NCBI GenBank assembly: GCA_002269645.1
Contig: NIVC01000827.1
Span: 339,929-403,928 of the forward strand
Length of the DNA stretch: 64,000 bases
Source: Macrostomum lignano
Taxonomy: Eukaryota
Direction of reading: 5' to 3'
A program made the translations under genes and the position numbers. Under the pieces are notes generated by a model, which saw only the letters and a list, made by a program, of their open reading frames with translations, was not told the DNA's origin and searched no databases. Each line of letters starts with the position of its first letter. Position 1 is the first letter of the stretch. Of the stretch, positions 35,758 to 59,244 are shown piece by piece.

Positions 35758-38700
35758 CCATTAGAAGAATCCGCCGCTTTCATCCAAGAGATTGATCCTT
35801 CAAAGCCTCTACCTGTTGATATTGAAGCTTTGCAAGCATTGAAATTTGAATCTGAGGATCCAGATGGTAAGAATTTTATTTTTTTTCTATTAGTTTTCTA
35901 CTACAGACAGAGACAGAGACAGAACATTTTTTAATCGGGCGTTTATGCACACACTGTGCTTTTGGGGTTGGTTGGTGCCATAATATTTGACAAACGGGTC
36001 AATAATTGCCACGGTCATTATATTTACCAAAGCTGACATAAACTTGCGCATTGCAGAATCCGCTCGCAGCTACAAAGAGGAGGGCAATTATCATTTCAAG
36101 CGTCGAGAATTTCAGTCGGCCAAGGAGAACTACACGGAAGGCCTGAAATCTGGCTGCAAAGATTCCGAAATGTTGGCAGTCTTGTACACCAACAGGGCTG
36201 CCGCCGACTTCCATCTGAAGAATTATGGTAGCTGTTATAAAGATTGCGCCAAGGCGAAGCAGCTTAAGCCTGATCATTACCGGTGAGAAACTGATTTTCT
36301 ATTTATGTTCTGTTCTGCTAAGTCTATGATATGTTCACTCTATCTATTCCGCATCTATCAACAATCTATCCCGCATCTATCAACAATCTATCGACCATCC
36401 ATTAACAATCTATATCTATAATCTATCAACAATCTATACCCCATCTATCCCGCATATATCAACAATGTATCCCACATCTATCAACAATCTATCCTTCATA
36501 TATCAACAATGTATCCTGAATCTATTAACAATCTATCGACCATCTATCAACAATCTATATCTATAATCTATCGACAATCTATCCCCTATCTATCCCGCAT
36601 CTATCAACAATCTATCGACCATCTATCAATAGTCTATATCTACAATCTATCAACAATCCATCCCGCATCTATCAACAATCCATCCCGCATCTATCAACAA
36701 TCCATCCCGCATCTATCAACAATCCATCCCGCATCTATCAACAATCCATCCCGCATCTATTAACAATCCATCCCGCATCTATTAACAATCCATCCCGCAT
36801 CTTCAACAATCCACCCCGCATCTATCAACAATCCATCCCGCATCTTCAACAATCCATCCCGCATCTATCAACAATCCATCCCGCATCTATCAACAATCCA
36901 TCCCGCATCTATCAACAATCCATCCCGCATCTATCAACAATCCATCCCGCATCTATCAACAATCCATCCCGCATCTATCAACAATCCATCCCGCATCTAT
37001 CAACAATCCACCCGCATCTATCAACAATCCATCCCGCATCTATCAACAATCCATCCCGCATCTATCAACAATCCATCCCGCATCTATCAACAATCTATCC
37101 CGCATCTATCAACAATCCATCCCGCATCTATCAACAATCCATCCCGCATCTATCAACAATCCATCCCGCATCTATTAACAATCCATCCCGCATCTTCAAC
37201 AATCCACCCCGCATCTATCAACAATCCATCCCGCATCTTCAACAATCCATCCCGCATCTATCAACAATCCATCCCGCATCTATCAACAATCCATCCCGCA
37301 TCTATCAACAATCCATCCCGCATCTATCAACAATCCATCCCGCATCTATCAACAATCCATCCCGCATCTATCAACAATCCATCCCGCATCTATCAACAAT
37401 CCACCCCGCATCTATCAACAATCCATCCCGCATCTATCAACAATCCATCCCGCATCTATCAACAATCCATCCCGCATCTATCAACAATCTATCCCGCATC
37501 TATCAACAATCCATCCCGCATCTATCAACAATCCATCCCGCATCTATCAACAATATATCCCGCATCTATCAACAATCTATCCCGCATCTATCAACAATCT
37601 ATCGACCATCTATCAACAATCTATATCTATAATCTATCAACAATCTATACCCCATCTATCCCGCATATATCAACAATGTATCCCGCATCTATCAACAATC
37701 TATCCCGCATCTATCAACAATCCATCCCGCATCTATCAACAATCCATCCCGCATCTATCAACAATCCATCCCGCATCTATCCAGAGCTCACGAGCGCGGC
37801 GCCCGAGCCCTACTGTCGTTGGAACGCCACGCCGACTGCGCCGCCTGGTGCGACGAAGCCCTCAGCCGGTGGGTCGCCGACCCGGAGCTTCTGCGCCTCT
37901 CCAGCCAGGCCCGCGCCGTCGCCGAGGCCAGCGCCGCCAAAGCGCGCCGCGAAGCCGCCGTTGGCAGGCGCGCCGAGCGCCAACTTGCCGGCGTGGCGGC
38001 CGCCCTCGCTCGCCGAGGCGTCCAAATCCGGCCGGGCACCGGGCGGCTGGAGATGCCCGACGATGCCAAAGTGGAGTTCGCGGCTGGCGACGCCGATGGC
38101 AACGGCGTGCTGCGCTATCCTGTGCTGCTGCTGTATCCTGAGTTTGGCCAGACTGATTTCCTGCGCGGAGTTGACGAGACAGCTAGCCTGGCTGAGGTTC
38201 GTGTTTCGATGGCTATTGTCTTGTTTACACCCATCAGCCCGTTGAAAACGATACCGTGACAAGAGTCGCTAAGAGTCATTTCAAACAGCTCACTAGTGAC
38301 TCTTGTAAGTCGGGCGACTCTTGTGACTTTTTAACAACTCAATCGCGTCACATGAGTTTTAGAATGGCCAGAGTCGCGAAAAAGCCGTCCAAGGATGCTG
38401 GCGTTTAACTTTCTACTAACTTAGTAGGCTAGTTAGAGTGCAATTAAAGTTCAGTAGGCTAAAACTGAGTGTTCATTACCCAATGAAAAGTCCAATAGAG
38501 TCGTTTCAGACGCGTTGCAGATGACACAGGTCAAATTAGAAAGAAGTGATTCTAAACGACTCTTAAAAACGACGAGATGTCCCAGTACAAGTCGCCAAAA
38601 AGTTCGCAGAAGAGGTGCTTTAGCGTCACTGTAAAATCGTTAGTGCATCACTTTTGAGTCGATGACCATGCATTTTCTATTCGCCCAGAAATGTCGATCC

Positions 38701-41700
38701 AGCAGTCTGTTTAAGGCCGATAGTAAGGACTCTGTAACGCGTCCAGAACGCCTCAGAAGTGACGCACTAACGATTGTACAGTGACGCAAAAGCGCTTATT
38801 CTGCGACTTTTTAGCGACTGCAGAACGCCGCTGAAACGCCGGAAATGTGGCTCTAATGCGACTCTACAACGCCTCGCTCAAATACGATCTTACGGCCCCA
38901 TAATCGTTACACCGTTGCCCCAGAGTCACTAGAGTCGCGCCAGAATCACTTGCGGCGCCCCAGAGTCGCAGACAAAACGCTTCAAAGCGACTATGGGACG
39001 CTTCTTGGCCTAGGTACCGTTTTCATCGGGCAGGGCTAATCCTCTTTTGAGGGCACGGAGAGTGTACATGTGTACATGCAACTTTTTAACAGTTTTGTCA
39101 TGAGCGCGTCACGTGAGTTTTACGAGCTAGAAATTATATACGAGTCCCGAAAGAACGACCAGGAATGGTTGTGCTGGCGCTTAACTTTTGCTAGATATGT
39201 GACTGATTCATCAACTTGCTTCAAACACAACCCAGTGACTCTATAGCTACTCTGGCACGCCTCAGATACGACTCCACCGCCTCAGAGTGGTTTCAGAGTC
39301 GCCAGGCAATAAGACACCTTAAATTCACTGTTAGGCGACTTTTTGACGACTTTTGGCGACTTTTACCGTGACTTCTCATCGTTTTAAAGTCGTCTAATAG
39401 AGTCACTTCTTTCCTAATTTACCTGTGTCATCTGCAACGACTCTGGGGCGGCGCAAGTGCCAGAGTGAGACGCTTCTTGGCCAGTGTTGCCACTGAGCAT
39501 TGTGACAAAAAAACGCTGACAGAAAAAAATAACACAGGGCATTTTCATCGTAGATATTACTAATATATTGTAACACCAATGATTAACAACAACGATAACA
39601 GTTGAAGACCAACCCCACCTAAAAATACCAAAGTGATAATTAACCAGTAAAGAGACTGAATAACAATTGGAATGACAACTCCTTTTCAATGTTCAATGTT
39701 CAATAGTGTAGCAGTCATAGTATGAGCGTAGTGAGTAGTCAATTTTTTTCTTTTTCGGAACATTCGGGAGACGAACAAGCGAAGCATGCTCCGCCTGTCG
39801 TTTCAATCTGGCAGCTTCCTCGGCTGTGCGTTGGATGACATTGTCCATGGCACGCTGTTCGATTACCAGCCGATCCGATGCAAATTGTGTCAGGCGCACA
39901 GCAACGTCCTGGTATTTTCCTTGCGCCTTGCGCAACCTCTCAATCGCTAGCTGAACTTCTCTTTCAGCCTCAAGGCACTCTGCAGCTGTTGCAGCCTTTT
40001 TAGCGACCTGTTTTTTTTGTTCTTCAGCAAGGCGCTCCAATGCAGTTTTTCGTTCGGCATCCTGTAGTTTTGTAGGGAGAAATAATAAATAAAAGGGATT
40101 ACTGCAAATCTTAGAAGTTAGCTCACTTAATTATTACCTTTTCAGCTTCTAGTCGCATTTTCTCCTGTTCCGCCTCAGCTGATTTACGAATAGCCGCCAG
40201 CTCATTTGCCTTCTTTTCGGCAGCCATATGCTGCTTGTATTGTGAGCTTGCCTTTAAAGCGGCCTGGATGAGCTCCTCGGGAATTGGCACATTTTTCGGC
40301 TTGAAGCTCCGAGCGCACAGAAAGCTGCGTGCCAAGAGTGAGTCGCGAAGTCTTTCGTCCGAGAGCCGATTTCGCTTTGAATTAACGCTAACATCATGCG
40401 ACTTTCCAATAAACCGCTCCGCATCTGCGTTCCCGTGAAATAGAGTACAGCACGCAGATGCAAGACGAGAAAGACGCGGGTACTTTCCTGTGTCTGCAGC
40501 CTTCCTCCAACCGCAGGCGATGTCACGATTGTCAGGCAAGAGGAGCTCACCACTTTTGGTTCGCAGATTCAGTAGCCTGACCTCAGAGGAAGCTTTTTGG
40601 CGATAAAAGTCACAGAATCTTCCTCAATTTCCCTTGAGAAGTCAAGGAACTTCATACTTCGCAGAATTTTCTTCTTCAGGGGCAGCTTTTCCTGCAAGTA
40701 TGCTGCCACCGCAATGTAAAATTGTTTAAAGCGATAAATGAGTGGCTTCTGCCGATCTTGCAGATTGTTTTGCTGCCCAATGGCAATACTAGACATAGGC
40801 AAGTGCAGGCTTTGGTTTTTGAAGTCAACGGAGACAACAGATTTTCTCTCGAAGGCAGATGGCTGCATAAACTGAATAGCTATCGACTCCAGAAGGGCGA
40901 TCAGCTCAGCATGCGATCGATGAATAAGAACTGTGCAGCTTTCTTGAAATGCGCTCTCAAAGCGGCTAGCAAGCTTCAGGGCGTGGATCGCAAAGCGTAC
41001 GCAAACTATGGTGTCTGGGTCTTGAAAGGCAGATCGGAGTCTTCGCATGCGCTTCGAATCGTCTGTGGACTGCGAAAGAAAAGCTGTCAGAGGAATCCAC
41101 TGTTCGATTATTCGCTCCAAACAGGGCAATAGAATTAGCCATCTTAACTCGACATTCCGCTTGAAAGCAAGTTGTGCAACGCCAATTTCTTGTTGGAGAG
41201 CCTTAAACTCTTTTCTGCGAGTGATGCTTCTGCTGAAACAAGCAAAAATGTCGTCGGCAAGATCGGAAACTTCCGAAAGATGGTTGTCACAAGCTTTGCG
41301 ATATGCGTTTGCAACAGTGTGGAGAGTGCAGCTTCCTACATCAATGAGATGCTCAAGCTCAGGAGTTTCACGTAGGATGGCACCAACTCCGGCATGTTCA
41401 CCAATCATTACGCTACACCCATCAGAAAAATTGCCAATCCACTTAGACAACGGCAGCTTGCTGTCCATTACACACTGACGAATAGCCTGAGCACATGAAG
41501 CAGCATCGAGACGTTCCAGTGGAAGTTGGTCAAGCATTTCAACCACGACTTTGCCCTCAGAGTTCAAATACCGCACGCAAATCATCATGAGACCATCACT
41601 CTCATCATAACTGATTGAATAGAAGCCAAATGATGACTCCACCTCCATGGCTTCTGCGCCCACAATTGACTCTGTTATTTGCTGCTTTTACATAGGGGAC

Positions 41701-44114
41701 AATAGCAAAAGTCAGCAAGTAGGCTTGCTTGGTGCGGCCACAAGAAAAGCCTGCTGCAATTTTTGAGTCTGGAAACATGGCTCTGAATAAATCAGGCGTT
41801 TCGTCTTCAGTGTTGAAGCTTTTCGACTTATACGCAGAGTTCCATACCCAGCGAATTTCAGCTAAGGTATTTTGCGCCGATTTGTTATCATTAGCAGATG
41901 AAGCACTATGCTTTGTGAAGAAAGCTGAGATTGATTTCTGCTGAAGTGCTGCAGCAGCATTCGACTCGTGAATTTTGGCTTTCATGTGCTGCTTGATTGC
42001 ACCAATGCCTCCACTTCCAACAAAAATTGGTCGATCGCACACATTGCAATATCCGTCAGTGTCAGAGTTGCCCTTTGTTAGCCATTTCTCGGCATTCAAA
42101 GTGGTAATCCAACTACTGGTAGGATCAAAGTTGGTCTGCCGAATGCGTTTAGAGTCAGTTGACTCAATGTTCGTGCTCATGCCTGCAGAGTCACTTTTTG
42201 TCTTTGCTGAGCTATTTGTGAATCAGTTAATCACTGGAATGCAAAATAAAAACAAAATAAAATGTTATAAATGTGTTTAAATTGTATGAAAAAAGATAAA
42301 TGATGAGAAACAATAAGACAATGTCATATTTTCAAGAATGGAGCTAAAATTACTGTTTATTTTAGTCTTTTTACTAATAAATACAGTAAAAATTTTAGGG
42401 TCATAATTATTCATTGAAAAAACGCCAGAAAAAGGAATTCAGCAAATAAAAACACAAAACGCCAAAAAACGCCAGTGTTAAAAAACGCCAAGAGTGGCAA
42501 CACTGTTCTTGGCTAAGGTACCGTTTGCATCGGCTAATCCATGGTTTTTGTGCATGGGTTAGCGTGGGGTAATCAACATCAATTATTCTGGTCGAATAGT
42601 CTCTGCAGTGTAACATGACAGTGATCCGAGTCAAAGACGACTTCAGTAAAACTGCACTTCTACGGCTATCATTGATTTTAGTATTTTACTGCAGTATTTA
42701 ACTGCCTGTTTACTGGGCATTAAGCGCTCACTGGATTTCCTTACCCACCTCTGGCAGCTCGTCTTAATCAGCCGCTGCTTGGAATCTGGCAGCACTCTGT
42801 ATGGCTTACATACCAGCAGAACAGTACTGTAAATTGTACAGTAGCTTTTCGCAAAACGATCTGTAAACTTGCAGAATTCTAAACTGCAAATTGCGCATAC
42901 GCGTGAGACCACAAATAATTAGCGTAAATTAAGTCGAAGAGCAGATTGGCATGTGATGTAAGTACATAATAGATAAATAGCAGATGAAAATGTTTTTCCT
43001 TTAACTTTTAACACTTTAAACTTTATTTAGCTTGGCAAACTCAGAGAACGCAAAAAAACACAAAACAACAGAACATGTTAAACAGCATTGGAAAACGTTG
43101 GAAAATGGTACTTAGAAATGAGAAAAATGTGTAAAAAGGTAAGCAAAATAGCAGACAGAAGAAGCTAAAATTTTCGCCTTAGCCATGAGAATACCCATGT
43201 CAATACCTTAAAGGCGACCAACCAAGGAGCTTCAGTGTGGAGGTGGTACCCCACCTACCCTACAGTCCTAACTTGCCCCCTACGACTTCTAGCTGTTCCT
43301 CAACATAAAGAACTTGAAGAAACTGCCTACAAGAACGACTCCAAGGTCAAGTAGGCAGTCGTCCGGGTATTCAACGCCATGTCCAAGAAGGAATTCGCCA
43401 CGGCCATCCACAAGTAGTGGAAGATGCGGTGGTTGATGAACAAGGAGAAAAAATGTCCGTAAAAAACTGTAAAAAACTCCGTAAAAAGTGTTGTTCGTAA
43501 AAACACCAATAAGAAAATGCGATAAAATAGTGAGGCAGTGTTTCCTTCTGTAAATAAGTATGAAACTAGAATTCAAATTAGCGCGAACAATCTTCCCACA
43601 CGCTTTTTCTACAATCGTTATCCATTCACGCAACTTTAGGTGTTCGTTGCGCTTGCGCGCGCTCAGAATCATTCAACCATGCCAGACTCCCACCCCATGT
43701 TTTATTATAGAGAAAGAGCTTTGTGGAGAGAAAAGCAACCATTCCCTTCCCCGATAGCAATATGTCCTTGCCTAGCCTTTCTTGGCTCATTTTACCTAGC
43801 CAGATTTAATAAACGTTTTGTCCAATCTACCTATTAATACCTGAGTTCCTCTGTTATTTCTCAGTTTAGAAAGATCTGCCAAATCCCTTTACATTCCTGC
43901 ACCACTCCCCGGCGAAATCATCCATCAGCCTTAGCCACCCGAATTTACTCGCTTCTACAATCCTCCCTTAACTCCCAAACGCCCTGTAAACCCTACCTGA
44001 AGTCCACCAGAAGTTACTCTGAAACTCACCTGAAGCCCCATGAAAGTCACCTTAAGCTTAGGAATCCACCTGAAGTGTCCTAATTCCCTATGAAATCGTG
44101 CTAATCCCCGTTCC

Positions 44115-44174
<60 letters not shown>

Positions 44175-47100
44175 AGGGCTTTCACCAGGCAACTTCAATC
44201 CATCCTGATACGCCCCACGGCTGCGTGACTAAAATCGGTAACCTTAGCCCTCGTGCCAGTAGAAATACCCCCCCCCGTCACCATTAGTCGTAGCTAGTGT
44301 CTTGCCTACCTACATTAGCGCTGCCAAGGTACGACCCGCATTGCGAGGAAGTCACCTATCCCCACCCTAAAGTACGCTACCAGATCACAACTCACACTCC
44401 TCCACCTAGATACAATTTCGAAATATCCAGCAGAAAATTAGACGGAGTTGATAGGGCTGTTACAATAGCGAGGGCAAGTGCAGAAATGCGTAGACAATAT
44501 ATCTAGATTATTAATGTAATGTATTAGAGAATACGCTGCTTCACATCACTTCTTTCGCGGCTGACCACCTTCCTGGTTGGAGTTGGCAGATGACACAAAA
44601 GTAACAACTTTGGCCGTATCCTTCGTGAATACTTGACGCAAGCAATTTCGGGCAGTCTCCCCAGCGCTGAGCCCTACATGTCTCTCCAACAGGCTCTTCA
44701 GCAACTTTCTGTTATCAGGAGTGGAAGCCCACTCCTCTGCACGCTCCATCTCTGGTAGGGATGTTGCTGGCAGCTTCACATCATCTGGCAGCTCGTCTAA
44801 ATCAGTCGCTGTTTGGAATCTGGCAGCACTCTGTATGGCTTGCAAAATCCGCGTCTGCACTTTGTTTTGAGCAATCACTTGGATCACAAAGTCACGGAGC
44901 TCTCGAATCTCCGCTTGACAAGAGCACGAGCAGCTACCAGTTGCAGCACCTGCAGGTAGTCCTTGATGATGTTCAGTTGGGCTGCTGCTTGTGCCCGCGA
45001 GCTGTGCGACGCCAGCCGTAGTAGCACAATTTGCTGAAGTCGCATACGCACATGACAGAGTCCCTTCTTCAGAGAGGTTTACTATGTTATAAACTGCAGG
45101 CTCAGATTCTGGATCTAAAACACTGGCACGTAGGTCGAATTGACCTGCCATTGGATAGGGCGGGGCATGGACACCGATTACTTTCCCAGTTGTTACTTCC
45201 TGATTGTAGTCGCGCCTGCAGCGCGGAGCTCCGCCGTTGCATCAGAAACATCGGATTCAGTTTGTATATGGGCTGGGAAAGTGCATCTAGCGTTAGAACT
45301 CCTGAACCTCTGGCGAAAGAACTTCAGCATATCGGCTACCTTTGCCTCTTTTTCATAGCGCAGAGACCTCGCCTGCTTTAAAGATGCAGCGAGGCTATCA
45401 TGCGAGTGTGCGATCTGCAGGACCACACCCTCAGCCCTCCAATCAGAAGTAGTGCAGATCACAGATACTTCTTCGTCACAGTTGTTGTTCCACTCATCAG
45501 GAGTCCAGTTTTTGCAGCGATCCGGCAAATCAAGCATAACTATTGGTGCGATAAAAAAGCTTTGGTCTGTGCGAAAAAAAGCAGAAAGTGTGTATTTTCC
45601 ATCGCGCTTCAAGCAGTTGGCTGCAATTGTGCAAATGCGAAATGGCGTACATTTTCCCTAGTCAAGTTGAATTGGGAAAAATACTTGTTCATTGTCGACG
45701 GTGGGTAGGCACATATAAAAAAATCGTACAGCTTTTACAGGCACAAAGTGAATACAATCTTCCTCTCTAAATTTCGAATTGTCCCCTTGATGTCTTAGCT
45801 TACGAAAAAATAAAGAAAAGATTCCTAGTTCTGATGAAACTACAGAGTACTCATAGGCATCCTTTGCTAAATCCAGTTGCAATTTCTTTGCAGACAAAAT
45901 GCTTTCCGATTCAGTTCTAATTACTACTTTAAGTCGATAGATTTCTTTAAACGATATCGCAAAAAAACTGTCCATGCTGGTCTTTGCAGCACACTCTTAC
46001 GTTGTCAAATGTAATTGACTTGAATAGCGAAGCCGATCGCATTTCGTCGGGCAAAAAATTCAGGGCGAAGCGCACTTGTTTTTAATTCTTATTGATGTTT
46101 TATCACTGCTTCTTGACAACCTGCTCGTTCTAACCAAGTTTCTAACCTGCTGTGCTGAAAGGTAGGGAGACTTAATTGCCTTCTTTAGGAGCAAAAAAAA
46201 GTTTTCGAATGGAAAAGCACTCATTGGATGAAGTGAGAGCTTGTGGTTCTTGACATCATCAGGCACATGTGCCAGGCTGTGAACGTTAATAGAAAAGAAA
46301 CTAGCACCATAAATAATGCGCGAATGCCTCAGAAATTCGTCTATGCACTTCTTTGCCAAGTCCAAGTGTGTCACACAAAGGACGCTGTCTGAAAGAACGA
46401 AGAATGCAACATGCAGAAGCAGGAAGTTGCAAAAAGTGGCATCAGACAAGCTTCCTTCAAAAACCACTACTCCAGTGAACTTAAGTAACAAAGCGAATTC
46501 CGTTCCTTGAATTTGTTTACGAATTGCAAACTACGTGCCTTTTGACTAAAGCAGTTCTTCACTGATTCCATGCTACGCTGCAGCTTTCTATTTATAGTGC
46601 GAATAACTAATGAAGGGAGGCGGCATGCCACAGAACCTTGGCTAATCCAGAAGTTGAGTGTCCTACGCATTACACCTAAAAGTATTAGATGCATGGGATC
46701 CAAAATAAAATCTTCACCATGTCGACTTTAAGTTCCTCTAGAATGGATACCCCATTGTGATGTTATTGGTCAGTCTTATCTCGAAAATTCTTGTATGTGC
46801 GAGCATGTGCCGTCAATTCATCGAAAATGACTGTCCGACGGTCATGTTCATAGAAACCTTCAACCTCGCACCGCTCAACACGCAGAATAGCCTGTGTGAC
46901 ATTTTGTGCACTTGAAAAGTGCGCGTGCAGGTGTGTCGCAGATAAAGATAACCTTGACATTGGACAAATGGATGTCATGAAGAACAAGAGACTTTGATTC
47001 ACAAATGGGTTTTAGTTCATCTACAAAAGATCGCAAGAAGCTACTAGGATCAGGCTTGCATGAACCGGAATAGAATTGCACCAAAATTGGTTCTTCTTTG

Positions 47101-50100: not shown

Positions 50101-51475
50101 ACGGAACGAATAAGTCTCGGAGCTTTCTTTGAGCTTAGAACTTCGTTTGTTTTACGCCCCGTGGGCAAAGAACTCAAGATAGGCTATTGCTTATGGATCA
50201 ACGAATAAGTAGGATGTAGTTTATTTATTAGATATTATTTAATGTCAGTTATTAATTCGCAAGCAGTTTGGGATAGCTGATTAAACGACTGAGATGAATT
50301 GCGACGGCACCGGGGTGCTAAATTATAATAGAAAACTCTCTGATTAATGAACTTATTAAACTTGGTTAACAGTCGAAGCAAGTAAATAATTGGGTGCACG
50401 AATCAGCAAAGGAAAAGGTAAAGGAAGTAGAGGAACGGGGGAACTGGGAATGAAATTGCACATGAAACAAGGGGGGGTTTAAATAGAGACAGCAAGCAGT
50501 TCCGCGGGTGGGAGCAGCTGCTGGAAGCCACGGTGGGCACACTGGTCACAGCATGGGCAGTAACAAAAAAACCCGGGACAATAGTGCAGTTTAACAAACT
50601 TCCACAAAAGGATAATATTTATCAACGCGTGGAACATGCGGTGGAGCGATGTCTGGGAAACCCAAAACAAGCCACACAGGGGAAACTTCAGCGGACAGCG
50701 CGGGGACGACTAATTGCAAAATTAACAGTTAATTAGAGTTTCAATTTACAGTGGCATCCCGCCTGCCACACATGTTAAACTGCAAAAACAAAGCTTTTAA
50801 AATCAAATTTGTTTATAAAAACAATTTTCATTTATTTAATTCAACCGCTTAGTGGAAGTAAAATTAGTTCTTATGCTACACATAATTGTCTTTTTGCTTT
50901 GGTCTTCGAATTAAGAGGCACTACGCCTTCAGCTTGTCTTAAAGAGCTTTCCCAGTAAATGCGCAGTAATTAAGTTTTGCCGATGTGCACATGCAGTATG
51001 TCACTGCTGTTTTACTTAGGTTCCGAGACAGTAAAAAATACCTAAGTAAAATACTGCTGTTCTACTGCAGTTTGATAAGAATATTTTTTGGGGACAGAGA
51101 TGTTGATGGTTGGTACGCTCGTAGATGTGGGTTGAGATGGCTATCATTTTAAATTCAATGTTTCCAATTAGCGCATAATTAAATTATCTCAAGGTGGCGG
51201 CAACCGTGTTTGATCCTAGTCAGCCACCGGCAGCCTGGAACTCAGCTAAAGCCTACAATCCAGACAGTGCTCTCTTCTACCTAGACTGCAGCAGCACCTC
51301 CGATTCAGCGGCAACATCAAAGGCTAAACCTGAGACGCTTGATAAACGCCTAACCTTGGCCCAGGTGTTAAAACGACCAGAGGCTGCTCTGACTGGCTCT
51401 GTACTGCTGTTGACTGTACTGCGGGCGGGACCTTATCACGACCGCTGGCTTAAGGAGTGGTGGGATTCGCAGTGA
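35758..51475 (+). CDS. TTC4: TTC4/Cns1 TPR Hsp70/Hsp90 co-chaperone; exons 35758-35866, 36057-36282, 37785-38196, 51194-51475; no ATG in the first exon found
   Basis: IEALQALKFE; ARSYKEEGNYHFK...YTEGL...LYTNRAAA (TPR); WCDEAL; LRYPVLLLYPEFGQTDFL; C-terminal PPAAWNSAKAY; intron phases 1, 2, 0 join cleanly (1029 nt). Confidence 0.92.
36345..37780. repeat. 22-bp minisatellite (ATCCATCCCGCATCTATCAACA) filling TTC4 intron 2
   Basis: About 60 copies; the last unit runs directly into the CCAG acceptor. Confidence 0.96.
38237..39031. mobile_element. Non-autonomous TIR element (GCCCG[T/A]TGAAAACG[A/G]TACC ends) rich in GAGTCGC/GCGACTC motifs; a second diverged copy at ~39090-39481 + 42514-42540
   Basis: Inverted ends at 38237 and 39031; internal similarity between 38320-38420 and 39090-39190; TSD unclear. 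Confidence 0.65.
39482..42505 (-). mobile_element. Near full-length hAT transposon, 3024 bp; transposase with two frame disruptions
   Basis: TIR CAGTGTTGCCACT / AGTGGCAACACTG; perfect 8-bp TSD TTCTTGGC; BED-like CNVC..H..H finger, FPDSKIA..FSCGRTK, SISYDES, SDG, CTLH, HGNADAERF dimerisation region (ORFs 42180-41605, 41663-40569, 40539-40123, 40040-39693). Confidence 0.93.
43240..43430 (+). mobile_element. Mariner transposase C-terminal relic
   Basis: VVPHLPYSPNLAPYDF*LF resembles the HPPYSPDLAPSDF motif; contains stop codons. Confidence 0.75.
44546..47769 (-). mobile_element. Degenerate CACTA/EnSpm transposon: Tnp2-type transposase (47769-~46060) plus second ORF(s) (~45975-44546); termini not located
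   Basis: FHFDGVDL, KPD..FL..FVDEL, ICDTPARA, CTKC, DPMHLILLG, FLLLHVA, NVHSLAH...AFPFEN; multiple frameshifts; a duplicate ORF2 fragment at ~42740-42810. Confidence 0.88.
49915..50750 (-). mobile_element. Solo-LTR-like sequence, with a block related to the U5 of the 6247 LTR
   Basis: Minus-strand start TGTAAAT; CTATTTAAAC TATA-like box at ~50480; TGGCAGC.CTAC..CTACTGAGAGT block resembles 7128-7157. Boundaries and TSD not confirmed. Confidence 0.35.
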
Positions 51476-51858
51476 CTGGGAAATCTGACTAATTTTATGA
51501 TCATTTATGATGAATTTTGATATCTTGTAAACTGGGGTTGTTACCAATTTGTAAGCGGTGATTGTCTGTCTGTTTGTCTTCAAGTCGGCGCACGTTTGTT
51601 AATAAAATATTATTTTTTCGATGAACTTGTTTATTTTCTTTATTCATTTGAATAAGGTCATCTTTATATATCTATATATCTTAGCTATCTTTATAACTAA
51701 GATAGGAGTAAGGTCAGATTCCCTTGTGCTGAGGGTGTATATACCTGAGGATTTATAGTCAGGGACCGCTGTACACCTTAGTTATAGACAGGCTAGCATG
51801 TCTCTGATAGTTACTTTTGGTTAACAAAGACACAGTCACCATGACTGATTGATACCTA

Positions 51859-52419
51859 CGAGGGGTGTCCAAAAGTAGTGGGAATTTTCAACATAACTCA
51901 TAGTTGGATTCAGATAGATAAACAGCGCTGAGGTTAAATGAAAGCGGCTTTATCTATCTATAACATACTTTTTGAATTTTGTAAATACCTACCGGCATTC
52001 AGAAGTTATGTCCAATCTAGTACCGTGCCCAAATTCCAAAATTCCAAAACAACAAAACAACATTCCAAAACAACAAAACATGACTATCGATCTGTAAGAG
52101 CATATCTATTGAAGTTCTTAACACGATAGTTAGTCACACTCAAATATCCTTGTCGTTAGGGATGGAGACCTTTACGTTCGTAGTCACCGTTGCAGTTGAC
52201 GTTCTTCTGCCAGCCAAGTCAGACAAGTATGGTCGGTAAGGCAGAAGTTCAAACTTCATGCTTTGAATTGCCTCTACTGTCCTTGAAACCGTGTGTGGTT
52301 GTGAATTGTCTTGGTGGAGCATCGGTGGATTGATCACGGTACTAGATTGGTATTCAAAAAGTATGTTATAGATACTATGAGTTAGGTTGAAAATTCCCAC
52401 TACTTTTGGACACCCCTCG
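51859..52419 (-). mobile_element. 561-bp internally deleted mariner
   Basis: TIR CGAGGGGTGTCCAAAAGTAGTGGGAATTTTCAAC at both ends; left TA; remnants LHQDNSQPHT and LLPYRPYLSDLA. Confidence 0.9.
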
Positions 52420-52457
52420 AAAATTGTTAACAAAGACACAGTCACCTGACTGATTGA

Positions 52458-53021
52458 TTGCTGGATTGGCCATCCATCCGTCGCTTATTATTCTACCCAG
52501 CTGTCACCAAGTCGCTGACGTGGCGACTGCTTGGCCTGTCTGACTGGTACAACCGTATCGATGAGCATCTCGTGCTGGGCGCGCTGCCATTGGCTAGAGA
52601 ATTCCAGTCTGTAGCAAAATCTGAGAGCATCAAAGCTGTACTGAGTATAAACGAACCGCACGAGGTTAAGCCGGCTTGGGTTGTTGGGGAGAAAGAGTGC
52701 CGCAGGCTGGGCCTAGCTCGGATGCAACTATCTGTACCAGATTTTGGCGGTCATTCGCCAAGCGCTAGACAGTTGCAGAAATGCTGCGATTTTATCGAAT
52801 CAACGGTTGTTAAGGGCGGCAGCGTGTACTTGCACTGCAGAGCTGGTAGGACTCGAAGCGGCACAGTGGCCGCGGCTTATCTAATGCGGCGCCATCGGTC
52901 CCTGGCGCCAGTGGATGCGTGCGATAGATTGCGCGCCAAACGGCCCAGCTTACTGTTGAATCGGCCTCAGCTGGATGCGCTGCACGAATTCTGGAGATTA
53001 GAGCAGGCTAGAGAAAGATGA
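52458..53021 (+). CDS. PTPMT1: PTPMT1 mitochondrial phosphatidylglycerophosphatase (dual-specificity phosphatase fold), single exon, no in-frame ATG
   Basis: RRLLFYP; WYNRIDEHLVLGALP; NEPHE; VPDF; catalytic loop VYLHCRAGRTRSGT (HCxxGxxRS); stop 53019-53021. Confidence 0.9.
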   Translation: MLDWPSIRRLLFYPAVTKSLTWRLLGLSDWYNRIDEHLVLGALPLAREFQSVAKSESIKAVLSINEPHEVKPAWVVGEKECRRLGLARMQLSVPDFGGHSPSARQLQKCCDFIESTVVKGGSVYLHCRAGRTRSGTVAAAYLMRRHRSLAPVDACDRLRAKRPSLLLNRPQLDALHEFWRLEQARER

Positions 53022-53438
53022 ATTCGATTTTTTACTGCGCTTGTAAAATCCCTAGATATTTGCTAGCATTTGAGTTTCCTAATTAAACAGATTAATCCAT
53101 AATGAAGTTGTCTGTAAAGTTTTTGGTCTCGTCGTTTTTCAATAATTTCTTTAATTTTTTACCATTTTGAATGCTTTGCACTACTAAAATAGTAATCTGT
53201 AGGGTAGGCGCGCCTCACTTCCTTGAAGAATCTCCACCAATTCCCCTGAAGTATATCCACCAATTCCTCTAAAGAATCTCCACCCGTTCCCCTGAAGAAT
53301 CTCCATTAATTCCCCTGAAGAATCTTCACCAATTCCTTTAAAATATATATATATCTTACATTTAATTTAGGTTTCGCAGCAGACAATGTAATTCATTGTA
53401 ATTGCTACGTAATTATTTTGTACTTTAATTTATTTCAG

Positions 53439-56400
53439 GAGAATTCAAAGCCGTATACAGCCTTGCTGCTGTTTCGTTTCTTTTTTATATTTTTGCCACA
53501 AACTGGCTATCTGCATCCGGATGAGTTTATGCAGTCAATTGAGATTTCTGCGGGTAAGAAATATATTTGTTTTCTTCCCTCCCACTAGCGCACGAACCGC
53601 CCCCTCAATTTATTTCCCTGCCCGCTAGCACACTAACCACCCCCTCAATTTATTTCTCTGCCCGCTAGTGCACTAACCACCCCCCTCAATTTATTTCTCT
53701 GCCCGCTTGCACACTAACCACCCCCCCCCTCAGTTTATTTCCCTGCCCGCTAGCGCACTAACCACCCCCCTCAATTTATTTCTCTGCCCGCTTGCACACT
53801 AACCACCCCCCTCAGTTTATTTCCCTGCCCGCTAGCGCACTAACCACCCCCCTTAATTTATTTCTCTGGCCGCTTGCACACTAACCACCCCCCTTAATTT
53901 ATTTCTCTGACCATTTTTATGACCAACCGACCAGCTACCAAGCTAGCAAGCTGTGTAACCGTATGTATTTCTATCTTTGAAAATCGCAGGCGACCTCCTC
54001 GGTGTCCGAACCAGCTCGCCACCCTGGGAGTTCACCGTTGATCGTCCAATCCGTAGCGCCGCCATACTCCATCTGTTCTATCACGGCCCGCTACTATTAT
54101 TTAAACATCTGCTAGTGGACGGTTTCTCTTGGTACGTTGACGCCTACTTTGTTGTGATAGTCACCCGGCTGTCTATAGCAGTTTTGTCGCTAGCAAATGA
54201 CGCTATGGTAGCATTACTGGCTAGAGAGCTCGGTCTGGACACGTTTCGCTGCCTGTTCCTCTACTCTTCATCGTACATAGTCATGGTGCACGGTACTAGA
54301 ACTCTGAGCAATGCCATTGAGTCGAGTCTTCTAGCTATTGTTTTTATCTGCCTACTGTTTGCCTTGAATGCCTATTCCGCGCCTGGCAATAGTCGTCATA
54401 CACTAGTAAAGGTGCTCCTATCAACAGCCGGAATTGTCACCGCTATCGGGGTTATGAATCGGCCAACTTTTGTCGCCTTCGCCGCTGTGCCCTATCTCTA
54501 CACAGCCTGGCGTTGCGCCCGCTCGCTAGTCGATCCTATTGGCGCCTGTTTCAATTTTGGCGCCACAATTCTGGCCGCATTTAGCGCCGCATTTGTCTCG
54601 TTAGTGTTGTACGATACGCTGACTTTTAATCCGACATTTGCTAGCAGATTCGCCTCGTTGGGTATGGACGAATTTCTAACCGTGAATGGCGCTTTCGATT
54701 TCCTGTCAGATTTTGCGCGATCGGCTGTTGTAACACCCTGGAACTTTGTTAGGTAGGCAGTGCCTGTTTTCCAATGATATTTATGCAGTTCACAATATCC
54801 TAGGAACCTATCACACTCCGCTTTCCTACCCCTTATACAGCCACCTCACTCCGCTTTCCTACCCCTTAAGCAGCCACCTCACTCCGCTTTCCTACCCTTT
54901 ATGCACCCACCTCACTCCGCTTTCCTACCCTTTATGCACCCACCTCACTCCGCTTTCCTACCCTTTATGCACCCACCTCACTCCGCTTTCCTACCCTTAT
55001 GCACCCACCTCACTCCGCTTTCCTAACCCCCTGTCGTAACCCGGGTCGGTTCGGGTGCCCAGCCCAAATAAAATACGGTGGTACCTGCAGGCGTTGTGAC
55101 GCTCTGCCAATATGGTATTACTGCTGACAGGCGTTATGACGCTCTGAGTACCAGGTTGCTCGTTCTGGCGTGATGACGCTCAGAACTAGCGTTGCCCCCA
55201 GAGGTGTTGCGACACTCTGGTGCTTATACAGTGGGTATACAGTATAAGTAAAAATAAAGTATGATATACAGGGTCCGCTCTCCTGGCGTTATGACGCTTT
55301 GGCGAGAATTTACTGTAATCTCTCAAGCTTCCCAGGAAAGACTGTGTTAAAACAGGCGGCTTACCGGTAGCCGAGTTATGAGATGCGCGTTTGCCCTGTG
55401 GCCGAGCTATCAGATGCACGTGTACCCTTTTTGGGTCGTTGTTGATTTTATTTGACGCGTTGAACAACTTGAGACTTTGTTAAAGTCACAGTACGAAGGA
55501 GCAAGAAAATTCCGAAGAAAAAAAGGCGAGTCAGAAAAACCTGGAGCGCAAATTAATATTAAATACCACCACAGGCTTAGGTTTAAGGGGGGGGCAGATG
55601 GCTTCACCGGCTGAGCCCACAAAAATTAGAGCAAAATAACAAACGCACTGGTCAGCCAATCAAAACCCCGCCTAGGGGGGGGGGGCGCTCCCACGCTAAA
55701 GCCGGCCCGGCCGCAGCCAACCAGCCCTGAGCACGGGGCAGGGGACACGGCTAGGGAGGGGCACGCGCAAAGCCCGGCCGCCAGCCAGACCCTGCCACGC
55801 CCGCCAACCCCCTTGCCAGCCCCAAAGTGCATCGCGCCCTGCAAACCGACAAGGGCGCATGCACTACACCCTTATGCACCCATCTCACTCCGCTTTCCTA
55901 CCCCTTATGCAGCCACCTCACTCTGCTTTCCTACCCCCTTATGCACCCACCTCACTCTGCTTTCCTACCCCTTATGCACCCACCTCAGTCCGCTTTCCTA
56001 CCCCCTTATGCACCCACTTCACTCTGCTTTCCTACCCCTTATGCACCCACCTCAGTCCGCTTTCCTACCCCCTTATGCACCCACTTCACTCTGCTTTCCT
56101 ACCCCCTTATGCACCCACCTCAGTCCGCTTTCCTACCCCCTTATGCACCCACCTCACTTCGCTTTATTTCCACCCTTACCTCACCATTTCTCTTTCCTCA
56201 GCTACAACTCTCAATCGGAGAACCTGGCTCAACACGGTACACACCCTCGCTGGCTTCACCTGATCAATCTGGCTTTGTTGCTAGGCCCAGCTGCCCCAGT
56301 ATTCGTCCGTCACGCCTGGGCTACTCTACGACAGTCGGCTCAGCAGCAGCAGCAACAGCAGCAGCAGCTCAGTAAAGCTATTGTTCTCGCCTGTCTAGTA

Positions 56401-57054
56401 CCTTTAGCCGCTCTATCACTGTTTCCGCATCAGGAGCTTCGCTTCTTAGTCCCGCTGTTGCCCTTAGCAACCGTGTGCGTCGCTCAACGACTCCGCTGTC
56501 GCCTGCCAATATTTAGCTTCGCCTTGCCCTGGATCGCTTTCAACGCTATCGCCGTGATTGGCTTGGGATTTCTGCACCAGGGCGGCGTCCTCCCCATGAC
56601 CGCTCATGTTGGCGAGCTGATTCGCTCGACCAATAGTCGACTGCAGCCACAGCAGGAGCCTCTCTGCCATCGGTTGCTGTTCCTAGGCACTTATCCGCCG
56701 CCGCAGCACACCCTGCTACTGCCGCAGTCTACCTGTGTACAACTCGAAGATCTCATGGGCAACCGGACTGCGCTGGAGTCCCGGGCTGCCCAGCTTCGAT
56801 CGGATCGAGTCGCCTCAGTCTATGCCGTGTTCTCCGCAGTTCACGCCGATCCCGTTAGAGCCGCATTCGCTAAATCTCGCTACGGTTTAAAGTACGCAGC
56901 CAGGGTGTACGGCCACCTGTCCGCTGAGAGCCTACCCCCGGCCAGGAGAGTGTTGGCGCGCCTGTCCGAGTCTTCTTCGCCAGTTGTCGAAGCCGGACGA
57001 TCGCTGTCCGAGGCTCTGTCCATTATGGTGTTTCATCTTGTGTTAACCGCCTAA
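53439..57054 (+). CDS. PIGZ: PIGZ/SMP3 GPI mannosyltransferase 4; exons 53439-53553, 53990-54752, 56202-57054; no ATG in exon 1
   Basis: PQTGYLHPDEFMQS; PPWEF...PIRS; TRTLSNAIES; NRPTF; YN..NLAQHGTHPRWLH; FPHQELRFLVP; GFLHQGGVLP; phases 1 and 2 join cleanly (1731 nt, 576 codons plus stop). Confidence 0.95.
53570..53905. repeat. ~41-bp minisatellite in PIGZ intron 1
   Basis: GCACTAACCACCCCCCTCAATTTATTTCTCTGCCCGCT units. Confidence 0.92.
54810..56165. repeat. 32-33-bp minisatellite in PIGZ intron 2, split by an ~840-bp TG...CA insertion (55032-55868)
   Basis: CACCCACCTCACTCCGCTTTCCTACCCCTTATG units on both sides of the unique insert. Confidence 0.88.
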
Positions 57055-57109
57055 CTTGCTGGTTCTTCTGTCATAGAGCTCTGGAGGTAGGGAAATTTCT
57101 ATCTCACTC

Positions 57110-57435: not shown

Positions 57436-58004
57436 CCCAAAAACTCCTATTTCACTCTATTGTCTCAACCAAATGCTGCAATAATCTCTTATATTCATTT
57501 TGCAATTTATAGATTTATCCATTCTATAAACGCACCTTGATCTGTCAGTGAATTTGCATGTTTGTTTCAATTTTTTCTACTTTTTAATCTTATAATTTTG
57601 TGCTATCCGAATTTTCAATAGAAAATCAGTATTTATCGATATTACTTAATGCTTAGTTTTGTACAATAAATCGATTATTTAACATCTGTAGTTTTTAATT
57701 ACTATTACTTCATGCTTATATTTAGTTTTACTCACACGGAATTGCTCATACAAAGTTAATGCACATTCACTAGTATTGCTACTCTAAGTAACAATTAACA
57801 GCTTTTTCTCTTTGATTTTTTGCATAAAAATGCATTATTAATTCCGTCTTGTCTACGTTGTCAAGAACATGAATTTTATTCTCCATATTATTACACAATA
57901 TATTAAGGACAGGTGCAATAAATACGGTTTTTCATATTTCATTCTTGTAACAATAAGCTACCAAATCAGATGACTTTGCTTGGTTTAAGTTTTTTTATAA
58001 TCGA

Positions 58005-58285
58005 CCCCATCCGAATCTCTACCCCAAGCTCATCGACCCCATTCCGATCTCTACCCCAAGCTCACCCACCCCATCCCCATCTCTACTCCAAGCTCACCCA
58101 CCCTACCCCGATCTCTACCCCAAGCTCACCCACCCCATCCCCATCTCTACTCCAAGCTCACCCACCCTACCCCGATCTTTACTCCAAGCTCACCCACCCC
58201 ATCCCCATCTCTACTCCAAGCTCACCCACCCTACCCCGATCTTTACCCCAAGCTCACCCACCCCACCCCATTCTCTACCCCAAGC
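58005..58285. repeat. ~32-bp C-rich minisatellite
   Basis: CTCTACCCCAAGCTCACCCACCCTACCCCGAT units. Confidence 0.9.
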
Positions 58286-58555
58286 TTACGGTCGTTCATC
58301 GCAAAGACGCAACATTTCTTGATTACACCGTCTGAGTGTTTTTAGATGCGTTTTTTGAAGAAAAAAATCTACATTAACCTCAGTCTTCAGTTTCCTTAGC
58401 CAATCGCGTGGCTGACTGTGTTGGAAGAACCGCATTGGCTAGCAGAACTGGAATTTATGCATAAAAATTTCTTAGTAAAAATGTACCAATGGACTGCAAA
58501 AATATACATAAAAATACTCATTAATTGACACTTCTTATTGAAAAACAAGAAAGGC

Positions 58556-59244
58556 ATGCAGTCTGGAAACAGTCGGAATCCACTGTTGCAGCAGCAGCAG
58601 CAGCAGCAGCAACAACACAGTTTAATGCCGCAGCAGTTGCAGCAACAACGGCAGCAGCAGCGGCGGTCTGCCAGTTTTCGCGGTTGTCCACCAGCTGGCG
58701 GGCGACGCCCTCTGCTGTCCGATTCGAGCTCCCTGCAGCAGCCGCAGCAACAGCGGCCTGAGAGTCCTATGGGTGAGGCATGCAACCACGCCAATACTGT
58801 ACATGTACTTAGGCAAGCATTTGTACACCACGCTCACATAAGGTGTACAGCGGTCCTTGACTTTCTAATCGTCCGGCATTATAAGAGCCGTACACTCTGT
58901 CTGGACCAATTTTCGTGCAGAAGCGCGAGATTCGGACCTTGTCTGACCTACCCCGAGGCACAAATTTTTGCTTTGCTAACTAACGATCCAAAACAATCCT
59001 TGCTATAAGCCCCAGTAATCAATACAGTGCACTTACATACCGCACTCAGCCATCGACCCGTCCAAGCTGGCGCCAAAACGGTCTAGCTTCTCCGACGCCG
59101 TCAGCCTCTCCCCGGCGCGCCGCAGAAAATTTGCCACCCCAGCCCCGGGAGAATCCGAAGTGTTCGACCGGCGACTGGAGGACTCGTTGCGTGATTTGCG
59201 AATCATGCAGACAAGACAGCTGGCTCGTCAGCAGGGTGCCAGCG
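58556..59244 (+). CDS. First two coding exons (58556-58772, 59050-59244) of an unidentified polyQ/low-complexity protein that continues beyond the window
   Basis: ATG at 58556; CAG-rich Gln tracts; donor G|GTGAGG, acceptor ACTCAG|, donor G|GTGAGA; phase 1-1; exon 2 is open (AIDPSKLAPKRSSFSDAVSLSPARRRKF...RRLEDSLRDLRIMQ). Confidence 0.6.

What the first reader, a model, noticed from the sequence alone, without database searches (positions are those of the whole stretch)
35758..59244. Candidate polycistronic (operon-like) unit TTC4-PTPMT1-PIGZ, possibly extending to the polyQ gene
Seen: three housekeeping genes on the same strand. The PTPMT1 stop to PIGZ acceptor distance is 417 nt. The TTC4 stop to PTPMT1 distance is ~980 nt, or ~390 nt without the mariner and its flanking duplication. 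AATAAA at 51601 and ATTAAA at ~53083 sit just ahead of the next gene. Inference: this leaves little room for promoters and fits cleavage/polyadenylation coupled to SL trans-splicing, as in nematode operons and reported flatworm dicistrons. Two of the genes act in lipid metabolism (cardiolipin and GPI pathways).
Basis: inference. Interest (0 to 1): 0.75.

Follow-up and report, generated by a model that had tools for sequence, protein, structure and literature searches.

The report
Flatworm TTC4–PTPMT1–PIGZ gene cluster
This is a tight same-strand cluster of three housekeeping genes in the flatworm Macrostomum lignano; its last two genes already share one transcription unit in the public annotation, so it is an ordinary example of the spliced-leader operons known to hold about 15% of this worm's genes.

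Summary
The window is Macrostomum lignano (Mlig_3_7, contig NIVC01000827.1). TTC4, PTPMT1 and PIGZ lie on the + strand with gaps of 988 nt (about 390 without a 561-bp mariner relic and its flanking repeat) and 417 nt.

The PTPMT1–PIGZ pair is well supported as a spliced-leader (SL) resolved dicistron. PIGZ exon 1 begins directly after the only TTTCAG acceptor in the gap. It has no genomic ATG ahead of its conserved N-terminus, and the AUG at the 3' end of the SL would be in frame. In both paralogous loci the public annotation names the two genes .g1 and .g2 of one transcriptional unit.

Adding TTC4 is plausible under the published criterion (repeat-adjusted gap under 1 kb) but not shown. TTC4 belongs to a different annotated transcriptional unit. 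No AG acceptor precedes the annotated PTPMT1 5' end, and both paralogs carry a genomic ATG there; the window copy has CTG instead.

Extension to the polyQ gene is unsupported: the gap is 1.5 kb and that gene has its own ATG. Gene order is not kept in two parasitic flatworms.

Verdict: a real but already-known kind of feature, largely captured by existing annotation. Low novelty.

The parts
35758..35866 (+). TTC4 exon A. It starts after the acceptor TTTTTAG, with an in-frame TAG immediately upstream and no in-frame ATG inside. The SL AUG would be in frame, giving MPLEES...
   Evidence: Orthologue tblastn hits begin at 35761; frame and stop analysis.
36057..36282 (+). TTC4 exon B (TPR repeats). 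The annotated CDS of the window copy (PAA76370.1, Mlig020912.g2) starts here at 36059, directly after a TTGCAG acceptor.
37785..38196 (+). TTC4 exon C (start of the Wheel domain).
38797..50733 (.). An 11.9-kb transposon-filled insertion in the last TTC4 intron. It is shared with paralogue L002 and absent from L003.
51194..51475 (+). TTC4 last exon, with stop TGA at 51473-51475.
51601..51606 (+). AATAAA, the candidate TTC4 poly(A) signal. It is conserved in all three paralogous loci.
51859..52419 (-). Internally deleted mariner-like element. It has 46-nt terminal inverted repeats and a transposase C-terminal remnant on the minus strand. It is present in all three loci.
   Evidence: the only PDB hits are SETMAR and Mos1.
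52426..52460 (+). Second copy of the ~35-nt direct repeat that flanks the mariner (first copy at 51820-51855).
52461..53021 (+). PTPMT1, a single coding exon. CTG at 52461-52463 stands where both paralogues have ATG. The annotated partial CDS runs 52464-53021, with stop TGA at 53019-53021.
53082..53087 (+). ATTAAA, the candidate PTPMT1 poly(A) signal. It is found only in the window copy (ATTTAA in the paralogues) and is followed by a U-rich tract.
53224..53336 (.). 23-bp tandem repeat (4.9 copies) inside the PTPMT1-PIGZ gap.
53433..53438 (+). TTTCAG, the only [T/C]TNCAG motif in the 417-nt gap and the presumed SL trans-splice acceptor of PIGZ.
   Evidence: motif from PMC8629364.
53439..53553 (+). 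PIGZ exon 1. It has no genomic ATG ahead of the conserved PQTGYLHPDEF motif, and the first in-frame ATG is codon 31.
53990..54752 (+). PIGZ exon 2 (Glyco_transf_22).
56202..57054 (+). PIGZ exon 3, with stop TAA at 57052-57054.
58556..58772 (+). PolyQ gene exon 1, with its own ATG at 58556. A candidate acceptor TCTTCAG lies at 58385-58390.
59050..59244 (+). PolyQ gene exon 2.

Best explanation
The window carries one of three paralogous copies of a Macrostomum lignano cluster, TTC4 > PTPMT1 > PIGZ. Its core is a two-gene SL-resolved operon, PTPMT1-PIGZ.

Inferred mechanism: RNA polymerase II transcribes PTPMT1 and PIGZ as one precursor. PTPMT1 is cleaved and polyadenylated in the 417-nt spacer. 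The 35-nt spliced leader is trans-spliced onto the TTTCAG acceptor at 53438|53439. Because the leader ends in AUG and the acceptor is in codon phase 0, the leader supplies the PIGZ start codon, giving M-ENSKPYTALLLF...

TTC4 lies 988 nt upstream, or about 390 nt once a tolerated mariner relic is discounted. It may be co-transcribed, but this is not shown. The simpler reading is that PTPMT1 is the first gene of the unit, which ancestrally used its own genomic ATG. The window copy has lost that ATG (CTG).

Shown here: gene identities, exon structures, distances, the acceptor motif and its phase, the absence of a genomic ATG for PIGZ, and shared transcriptional-unit names for the two genes at both paralogous loci.

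Inferred only: actual SL addition, the poly(A) site, and the position of the promoter.
For: - Species and locus.
- PIGZ exon 1 starts at the single consensus acceptor in the gap (motif from PMC8629364).
- The annotated partial CDS starts exactly at that acceptor in the window and in L003.
- There is no in-frame ATG between the upstream stop (53316) and codon 31.
- The Met of mollusc, arthropod and vertebrate PIGZ orthologues aligns 1-3 residues before ENSKPY, so no coding exon is missing.
- An independent WormBase/UniRef model also lacks a Met.
- The SL ends in ATG, and flatworm SL AUGs act as initiators (Cheng 2006, cited in PMC9851317, and PMC12582326).
- PTPMT1 and PIGZ are Mlig019743.g1/.g2 and Mlig024868.g1/.g2 at the paralogous loci. 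The naming convention 'unit X contains genes X.g1 and X.g2' is stated in Wudarski 2017 Supplementary Fig. 5a.
- TBONE cuts transcriptional units at SL and poly(A) signals.
- TTC4 is in a separate unit cluster, Mlig020912.g1-3.
- PTPMT1 has a genomic ATG in L002 and L003 and no [T/C]TNCAG near its start.
Against: - No RNA data could be examined here. SL addition to PIGZ and the shared precursor are inferred from the sequence and from gene names.
- An in-frame mini-exon (ATG at 53102-53113 plus donor GTAAAG) could in principle supply a cis start for PIGZ.
- In the window, PIGZ is named Mlig016694.g3 and the PTPMT1 name is hidden, so the shared unit is documented directly only for the two paralogues.
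- In L002 the annotated PIGZ start is 18 nt inside exon 1, not at the acceptor.
- The annotated PTPMT1 5' end falls immediately after the ATG (or CTG) in all three copies. This is unexplained. It could mean SL-bearing reads were mapped there, which would favour TTC4-PTPMT1 coupling.
- ATTAAA is not conserved among the copies.
Confidence: 0.7

Rival explanations
1. One promoter upstream of TTC4 drives a three-gene polycistron, TTC4-PTPMT1-PIGZ. Both downstream genes are released by polyadenylation coupled to SL trans-splicing, and transcription reads through the mariner relic.
For: - All three genes are on one strand with nothing annotated between them.
- The repeat-adjusted gaps (about 390 and about 300-417 nt) pass the published <1 kb operon criterion.
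- That paper notes that assembled transcriptional units tend to break at repeats inside operon spacers, which would explain the separate TTC4 unit.
- The arrangement, including the mariner, is kept in all three paralogous loci.
- In the window none of the three genes has a usable genomic ATG. The boundaries 35758, 52464 and 53439 are all in phase 0 with the SL AUG.
- The annotated PTPMT1 CDS starts right after the ATG position, as expected if SL-trimmed reads defined it.
- The nearest recognisable upstream genes are on the minus strand, so TTC4 would be first in the unit.
Against: - The dinucleotide before 52464 is TG, not AG. The only [T/C]TNCAG in the gap lies inside the mariner.
- L002 and L003 have a genomic ATG, so PTPMT1 does not need the SL AUG. 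The CTG is a derived, window-specific change.
- TTC4 is annotated in a different transcriptional-unit cluster, and PTPMT1 is '.g1', the first gene of its unit.
- The three copies are only 1-5% diverged, so their shared order says nothing about selective constraint.
- Gene order is not conserved in Paragonimus or Sparganum.
Confidence: 0.3
2. These are three independent genes that simply sit close together. Each has a compact promoter in its upstream spacer. PIGZ is SL trans-spliced as a monocistronic outron-bearing transcript, or uses the 53102 mini-exon. On this view the shared unit names are read-through artefacts of short-read assembly.
For: - About 60% of SL trans-spliced M. lignano genes are not in operons.
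- A possible in-frame cis mini-exon exists.
- In the reported transgenes the regulatory elements are proximal, within 2 kb upstream.
Against: - A PIGZ promoter would have to sit within 417 nt that also hold the PTPMT1 3' UTR and a minisatellite.
- Both paralogous loci independently have PTPMT1 and PIGZ in one unit.
- PIGZ annotations start at the acceptor, not at the mini-exon.
Confidence: 0.12
3. The unit extends one gene further, to the polyQ gene (exons 58556-58772 and 59050-59244), giving a four-gene operon.
For: - The polyQ gene is on the same strand.
- The gap is 1501 nt, falling to about 885 nt after removing two minisatellites.
- A TCTTCAG acceptor motif lies 166 nt before the ATG.
- AATAAA at 57665 and 57917 could end PIGZ.
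- Indels relative to the paralogues keep the reading frame.
Against: - The gene has its own ATG and an AT-rich region of about 500 nt upstream that could hold a promoter.
- The acceptor motif occurs 2.75 times per kb by chance.
- No protein-coding gene is annotated within 10 kb downstream of PIGZ in the GenBank record.
- There is no family hit for the product.
Confidence: 0.1

Closest known systems
Macrostomum lignano SL trans-spliced operons / multi-gene 'transcriptional units' (Wudarski et al. 2017, PMC5730564; Ustyantsev & Berezikov 2021, PMC8629364)
   Same: Same species and a single 35-nt SL ending in ATG. Same-strand neighbours with repeat-adjusted gaps under 1 kb. A [T/C]TNCAG acceptor at the downstream gene. 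Repeats are tolerated in the spacers. Most such operons hold 2-3 genes made up of conserved genes. PTPMT1 and PIGZ are already annotated as genes g1 and g2 of one unit at the paralogous loci.
   Different: The spacers (417 nt and 988 nt) are longer than the modal spacer of about 100 bp. TTC4 is annotated in another unit. PTPMT1 shows no canonical acceptor at its annotated 5' end.
Flatworm SL 3'-terminal AUG used as initiator methionine (Cheng et al. 2006 J Biol Chem, as cited in PMC9851317 and PMC12582326)
   Same: PIGZ, and possibly TTC4 exon A, lacks a genomic AUG. Its acceptor is in phase 0, so the SL AUG restores a full-length N-terminus that matches the orthologues.
   Different: The mechanism was demonstrated in Schistosoma mansoni. 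Here it is inferred from sequence alone.
Caenorhabditis elegans operons (SL2-type)
   Same: Polycistronic precursor. 3' end formation of the upstream gene is coupled to trans-splicing of the downstream gene. The genes are housekeeping genes and mostly unrelated in function.
   Different: M. lignano has one SL and no specialised SL2. The spacers here are 3-8 times longer than the ~100-bp nematode spacer, and one holds a transposon relic.
Parasitic-flatworm candidate operons, e.g. cytochrome b-c1 subunit 7 - enolase (Davis & Hodgson 1997; PMC12582326)
   Same: Same-strand pairs in which the second gene is SL trans-spliced.
   Different: The operational threshold there is <=300 bp. This gene trio is not syntenic in the two parasitic species examined.

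Membership tests
M. lignano operon as defined by Ustyantsev & Berezikov 2021 | Immediately adjacent genes in the same orientation, with no opposite-strand gene between them | tested here: met
   GenBank gene calls list TTC4, PTPMT1 and PIGZ consecutively on the + strand. The accessions PAA76370 and PAA76372 flank PTPMT1.
M. lignano operon as defined by Ustyantsev & Berezikov 2021 | Repeat-adjusted intergenic distance under 1000 bp | tested here: met
   Gap 1 is 988 nt raw and about 390 nt without the mariner and its repeat. Gap 2 is 417 nt raw and about 304 nt without the 23-bp tandem repeat. These are CDS-to-CDS distances, so transcript-to-transcript distances are shorter.
M. lignano operon as defined by Ustyantsev & Berezikov 2021 | The downstream gene is SL trans-spliced (SL-containing reads at its 5' end) | tested here: inconclusive
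   PIGZ has a consensus acceptor, the annotated start sits at that acceptor, and there is no genomic ATG; this is strong indirect support. PTPMT1 has no AG at its annotated 5' end and an ATG in the paralogues. Read-level data are not available with these tools.
Polycistronic transcriptional unit (Wudarski 2017 TBONE annotation) | Two or more genes cut from one assembled precursor, sharing the unit prefix | tested here: met
   PTPMT1 and PIGZ are Mlig019743.g1/.g2 and Mlig024868.g1/.g2 at the paralogous loci. This is not met for TTC4 (Mlig020912). In the window PIGZ is Mlig016694.g3, and the PTPMT1 name is not visible.
Operon in the strict sense | A single promoter, with no internal transcription start sites | not testable with these tools
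   This needs RAMPAGE/CAGE data, chromatin data or reporter assays.
SL-AUG-initiated ORF (Cheng 2006 type) | The trans-splice acceptor is in phase with the ORF and no genomic AUG can give the full-length protein | tested here: met
   For PIGZ: phase 0, upstream stop at 53316, first ATG at codon 31 after the invariant PQTGYLHPDEF motif, and orthologue Met aligned just before residue 1. TTC4 exon A is also in phase 0, but an upstream cis exon cannot be excluded.
C. elegans-type operon | A specialised SL2 leader on downstream genes and a spacer of about 100 bp | tested here: not met
   M. lignano has a single SL, and the spacers here are 417 and 988 nt.

The most novel reading that the evidence does not exclude
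All three genes, in all three paralogous copies, are expressed from one precursor of about 9-21 kb that reads through a mariner relic. Every one of them takes its start codon from the AUG at the SL 3' end. For PTPMT1 this would happen at a non-AG (TG) 3' splice site, which would explain two things: why its annotated mRNA begins exactly after the ATG position, and why the window copy could lose its genomic ATG without harm.
Probability: 0.12. Interest if true: 0.4.

Novelty: already known. Interest (0 to 1): 0.15.

Why it matters
The locus is a clean textbook example of how a flatworm packs housekeeping genes. A downstream gene, PIGZ, has given up both its promoter and its start codon to the spliced-leader machinery.

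It is useful as a worked example and as a test locus. M. lignano is transgenic-tractable, so the 417-nt and 988-nt spacers could be tested directly for promoter activity.

It does not open a new question. SL operons, start-codon donation by the SL, and repeat-laden operon spacers have all been described genome-wide for this species.

Tried and rejected
1. PTPMT1 as a retrocopy of an SL-bearing mRNA. By eye the sequence before its start resembles the SL 3' end. A local-alignment scan of the SL against both strands of the window and both paralogous loci put this site below many chance hits, so I rejected the idea. The scan also shows there is no SL RNA gene in the window.

2. In-frame AG acceptors for PTPMT1. 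The AG at 52499-52500 is out of frame. The AG at 52510-52511 is in frame but would delete the conserved LLFYP segment. CACAG|TCACC at 52441 would include the ATG, which contradicts the 'partial' annotation. None is convincing.

3. A missing upstream coding exon of TTC4. I ran tblastn with 16 orthologues against the window and found nothing upstream of 35761.

4. Transcript evidence from public assemblies. The protein clusters hold only GenBank and UniRef members, with no RNA-seq-derived contigs. Gene IDs do not occur in searchable paper text, and the Wudarski 2017 supplements held here contain no gene tables.

5. Synteny in other flatworms. TTC4 neighbours differ in Paragonimus westermani and Sparganum proliferum. 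Two Schistosoma proteins could not be located. No flatworm PIGZ or PTPMT1 orthologues outside Macrostomum were returned.

6. Relaxed constraint on the window's ATG-less PTPMT1. It has only one copy-specific nonsynonymous change and no frameshifts, which is too little divergence to judge.

7. Rfam and tRNA scans of the window found nothing. Pfam found nothing for the mariner ORF; the PDB search identified it instead.
Full report
**Origin of the window.** The single-exon PTPMT1 ORF matches a GenBank protein at 100% identity. That protein is on contig NIVC01000827.1 of assembly GCA_002269645.1, which is Macrostomum lignano Mlig_3_7. Window position 1 is record position 339929.

Two further loci in the same assembly carry the same three genes in the same order and orientation: L002 on NIVC01000083.1 and L003 on NIVC01000082.1. 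This fits the known partial genome duplication of the DV1 line.

**Check of the observation.** The three gene identities are correct.
- TTC4 has TPR and Cns1/TTC4 Wheel domains, and its orthologues in flukes, tapeworms, molluscs and vertebrates are named TTC4.
- PTPMT1's best solved-structure match is mouse PTPMT1 (3RGO, E=7.7e-22). That is eight orders of magnitude better than any other phosphatase, and the P-loop reads HCRAGRTRS.
- PIGZ is a Glyco_transf_22 protein whose best named relatives are 'GPI mannosyltransferase 4 / PIGZ'.

Exon models were built from splice-site enumeration and confirmed against the deposited proteins.
- TTC4: 35758-35866, 36057-36282, 37785-38196, 51194-51475.
- PTPMT1: 52464-53021.
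- PIGZ: 53439-53553, 53990-54752, 56202-57054. This is the unique solution and reproduces PAA76372.1 exactly.

The quoted distances hold: 417 nt from the PTPMT1 stop to PIGZ exon 1, and 982-988 nt from the TTC4 stop to PTPMT1.

The mariner is real. It is 561 bp (51859-52419) with 46-nt terminal inverted repeats, and its minus-strand ORF remnant hits only SETMAR and Mos1 transposases in the PDB. A ~35-nt direct repeat flanks it. Removing both leaves about 390 nt.

AATAAA (51601) and ATTAAA (53082) are present. However, ATTAAA is ATTTAA in both paralogues, so it is a weak candidate for the working signal.

**What is known for this species.** M. lignano has one 35-nt spliced leader, CGGTCTCTTACTGCGAAGACTCAATTTATTGCATG. 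About 30% of genes are trans-spliced, and about 15% of genes are assigned to operons. The operon rule is same-strand neighbours, a repeat-adjusted gap under 1 kb, and a trans-spliced downstream gene. The preferred acceptor is [T/C]TNCAG.

The genome annotation was made by cutting assembled 'transcriptional units' at SL-read peaks and poly(A) peaks (TBONE). Genes from one unit share its prefix, for example Mlig030697.g1 and .g2. Flatworm SLs end in AUG, and this AUG can serve as the initiator.

**PTPMT1-PIGZ.** The 417-nt spacer contains exactly one [T/C]TNCAG, and it ends at 53438, the base before PIGZ exon 1. In the window and in L003 the deposited partial CDS starts at exactly that base.

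Upstream in frame there is a stop at 53316 and no ATG. The first in-frame ATG is codon 31, which lies after the invariant PQTGY(L/I)HPDEF motif. Aligned with mollusc, tick, horseshoe-crab, lizard and opossum PIGZ, the M. lignano protein starts 1-3 residues after their Met, so no coding exon is missing. The acceptor is in phase 0, so SL-AUG + GAG AAT... gives MENSKPYTALLLF. An independent UniRef model also has no Met and simply reads back into the acceptor (NLFQ-ENSKPY).

At both paralogous loci PTPMT1 and PIGZ are Mlig019743.g1/.g2 and Mlig024868.g1/.g2, meaning two genes cut from one unit. In the window PIGZ is Mlig016694.g3; the window's PTPMT1 name is masked.

I therefore regard PTPMT1-PIGZ as an SL-resolved dicistron in which the SL donates the PIGZ start codon. 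The remaining alternative is an in-frame 12-nt mini-exon (ATG at 53102, donor GTAAAG). It would put a start site only 80 nt past the PTPMT1 stop, and no annotation uses it.

**TTC4-PTPMT1.** Only proximity supports coupling here. TTC4 copies are Mlig020912.g1-3, a different unit cluster. The authors do note that units tend to break at repeats inside operon spacers, and a mariner sits in this one.

No [T/C]TNCAG lies near the PTPMT1 start, and the dinucleotide before the annotated 5' end (52464) is TG. L002 and L003 have ATG immediately before GATTGG, whereas the window has CTG. The window shares the 11.9-kb intron insertion with L002 but not L003, and both L002 and L003 keep ATG. The CTG is therefore a recent, copy-specific loss of the start codon. 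The next in-frame ATG is codon 87.

The window copy is otherwise intact, with one private nonsynonymous change.

One feature is unexplained. In all three loci the deposited CDS is '5' partial' and begins at the codon right after the ATG position. That is what SL-trimmed reads would give, but there is no AG acceptor there. An SL-like sequence in the genome could have misled read parsing, so I tested for one. The similarity is no better than many chance sites in the window.

**TTC4 5' end and surroundings.** Homology to orthologues begins at 35761. Exon A follows TTTTTAG, with TAG in frame immediately upstream, and contains no ATG. So either an undetected upstream exon or the SL AUG (in phase, giving MPLEES...) supplies the start.

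Annotated TTC4 5' ends differ among the copies. One is at 36059, right after a TTGCAG acceptor. Two are 39 nt inside exon A.

No protein-coding gene is annotated within 10 kb upstream. The nearest recognisable ORFs upstream are on the minus strand: a PHD finger at 29569-30519, a metallo-beta-lactamase fold at 19835-20410, and a DEG/ENaC channel at 3861-4460. TTC4 is therefore the first + strand gene of this block.

**PolyQ gene.** Its exons at 58556-58772 and 59050-59244 have clean splice sites. Indels relative to the paralogues are multiples of three.

The gene has its own ATG and lies 1501 nt after the PIGZ stop, or about 885 nt without two minisatellites. It has no family assignment. No annotated CDS lies within 10 kb downstream of PIGZ in GenBank. 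A TCTTCAG motif lies 166 nt upstream of the ATG, but such motifs occur 2.75 times per kb. Extension of the unit to this gene is unsupported.

**Conservation.** The three M. lignano copies are 95-99% identical across exons, introns and spacers alike, so they carry no information about constraint.

In Paragonimus westermani, TTC4 is preceded by a ZER1-like gene. In Sparganum proliferum it is flanked by HYPK and a FERM-domain gene on the opposite strand. No PIGZ or PTPMT1 orthologue from another flatworm was returned. The cluster is therefore not an ancient flatworm operon on present evidence.

The phenomenon and its genome-wide extent are published. This pair is already encoded as one transcriptional unit in the public annotation. 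Novelty is 'already known' and interest is low.

Noticed in passing
window 52461-52463 (compare L002 and L003 at 9998-10000): The window copy of PTPMT1 has CTG where both paralogues have the ATG start codon (TTCATGG becomes TTGCTGG). The next in-frame ATG is codon 87. This is either a start-loss allele in a redundant neopolyploid genome or a copy that relies on a CUG or SL start.
   Followed up: partly
window 52464; L002 and L003 at 10001: All three deposited PTPMT1 CDSs are '5' partial' and begin at the codon right after the ATG position, yet no AG acceptor precedes it. This may be an annotation artefact of SL-read trimming or an unusual junction.
   Followed up: partly
window 38797-50733: An 11.9-kb insertion in the last TTC4 intron carries several long minus-strand ORFs (40569-42180 and 44546-47579, with a weak DUF4218 hit at 46060-46491). 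These are probably DNA transposons. The insertion is shared with L002 at 97-99% identity and absent from L003.
   Followed up: partly
window 36300-37780: A long 22-bp minisatellite (ATCTATCAACAATCCATCCCGC-like unit) fills TTC4 intron 2.
   Followed up: no
window 53581-53909, 54814-55030, 55864-56165, 57103-57435, 58004-58286: C-rich minisatellites of 32-41 bp recur in the PIGZ introns and 3' flank. They give the long spurious proline/leucine-rich ORFs seen in the ORF list.
   Followed up: no
window 60860-63650: A tandem array of about 2.8 kb produces open reading frames of 760-800 aa in several frames (SPSPVCI... and GEGEIQT... repeats). It is likely satellite DNA rather than a gene.
   Followed up: no
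window 36051-36059: The TTC4 exon B acceptor TTGCAG matches the SL acceptor motif, and the window's annotated TTC4 transcript starts there. This is possibly an internal acceptor shared by cis- and trans-splicing. The SL AUG would be out of frame at this site.
   Followed up: no
window 3861-4460 (-), 19835-20410 (-), 29569-30519 (-): Minus-strand ORFs upstream of the cluster have Pfam hits to the amiloride-sensitive sodium channel family, the metallo-beta-lactamase fold and the PHD finger. They show that TTC4 opens the + strand block.
   Followed up: no
L003 10977-14259: The paralogue's PIGZ is annotated as only 380 aa, although the DNA aligns through to the equivalent of the window's stop codon. 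The model is probably truncated.
   Followed up: no
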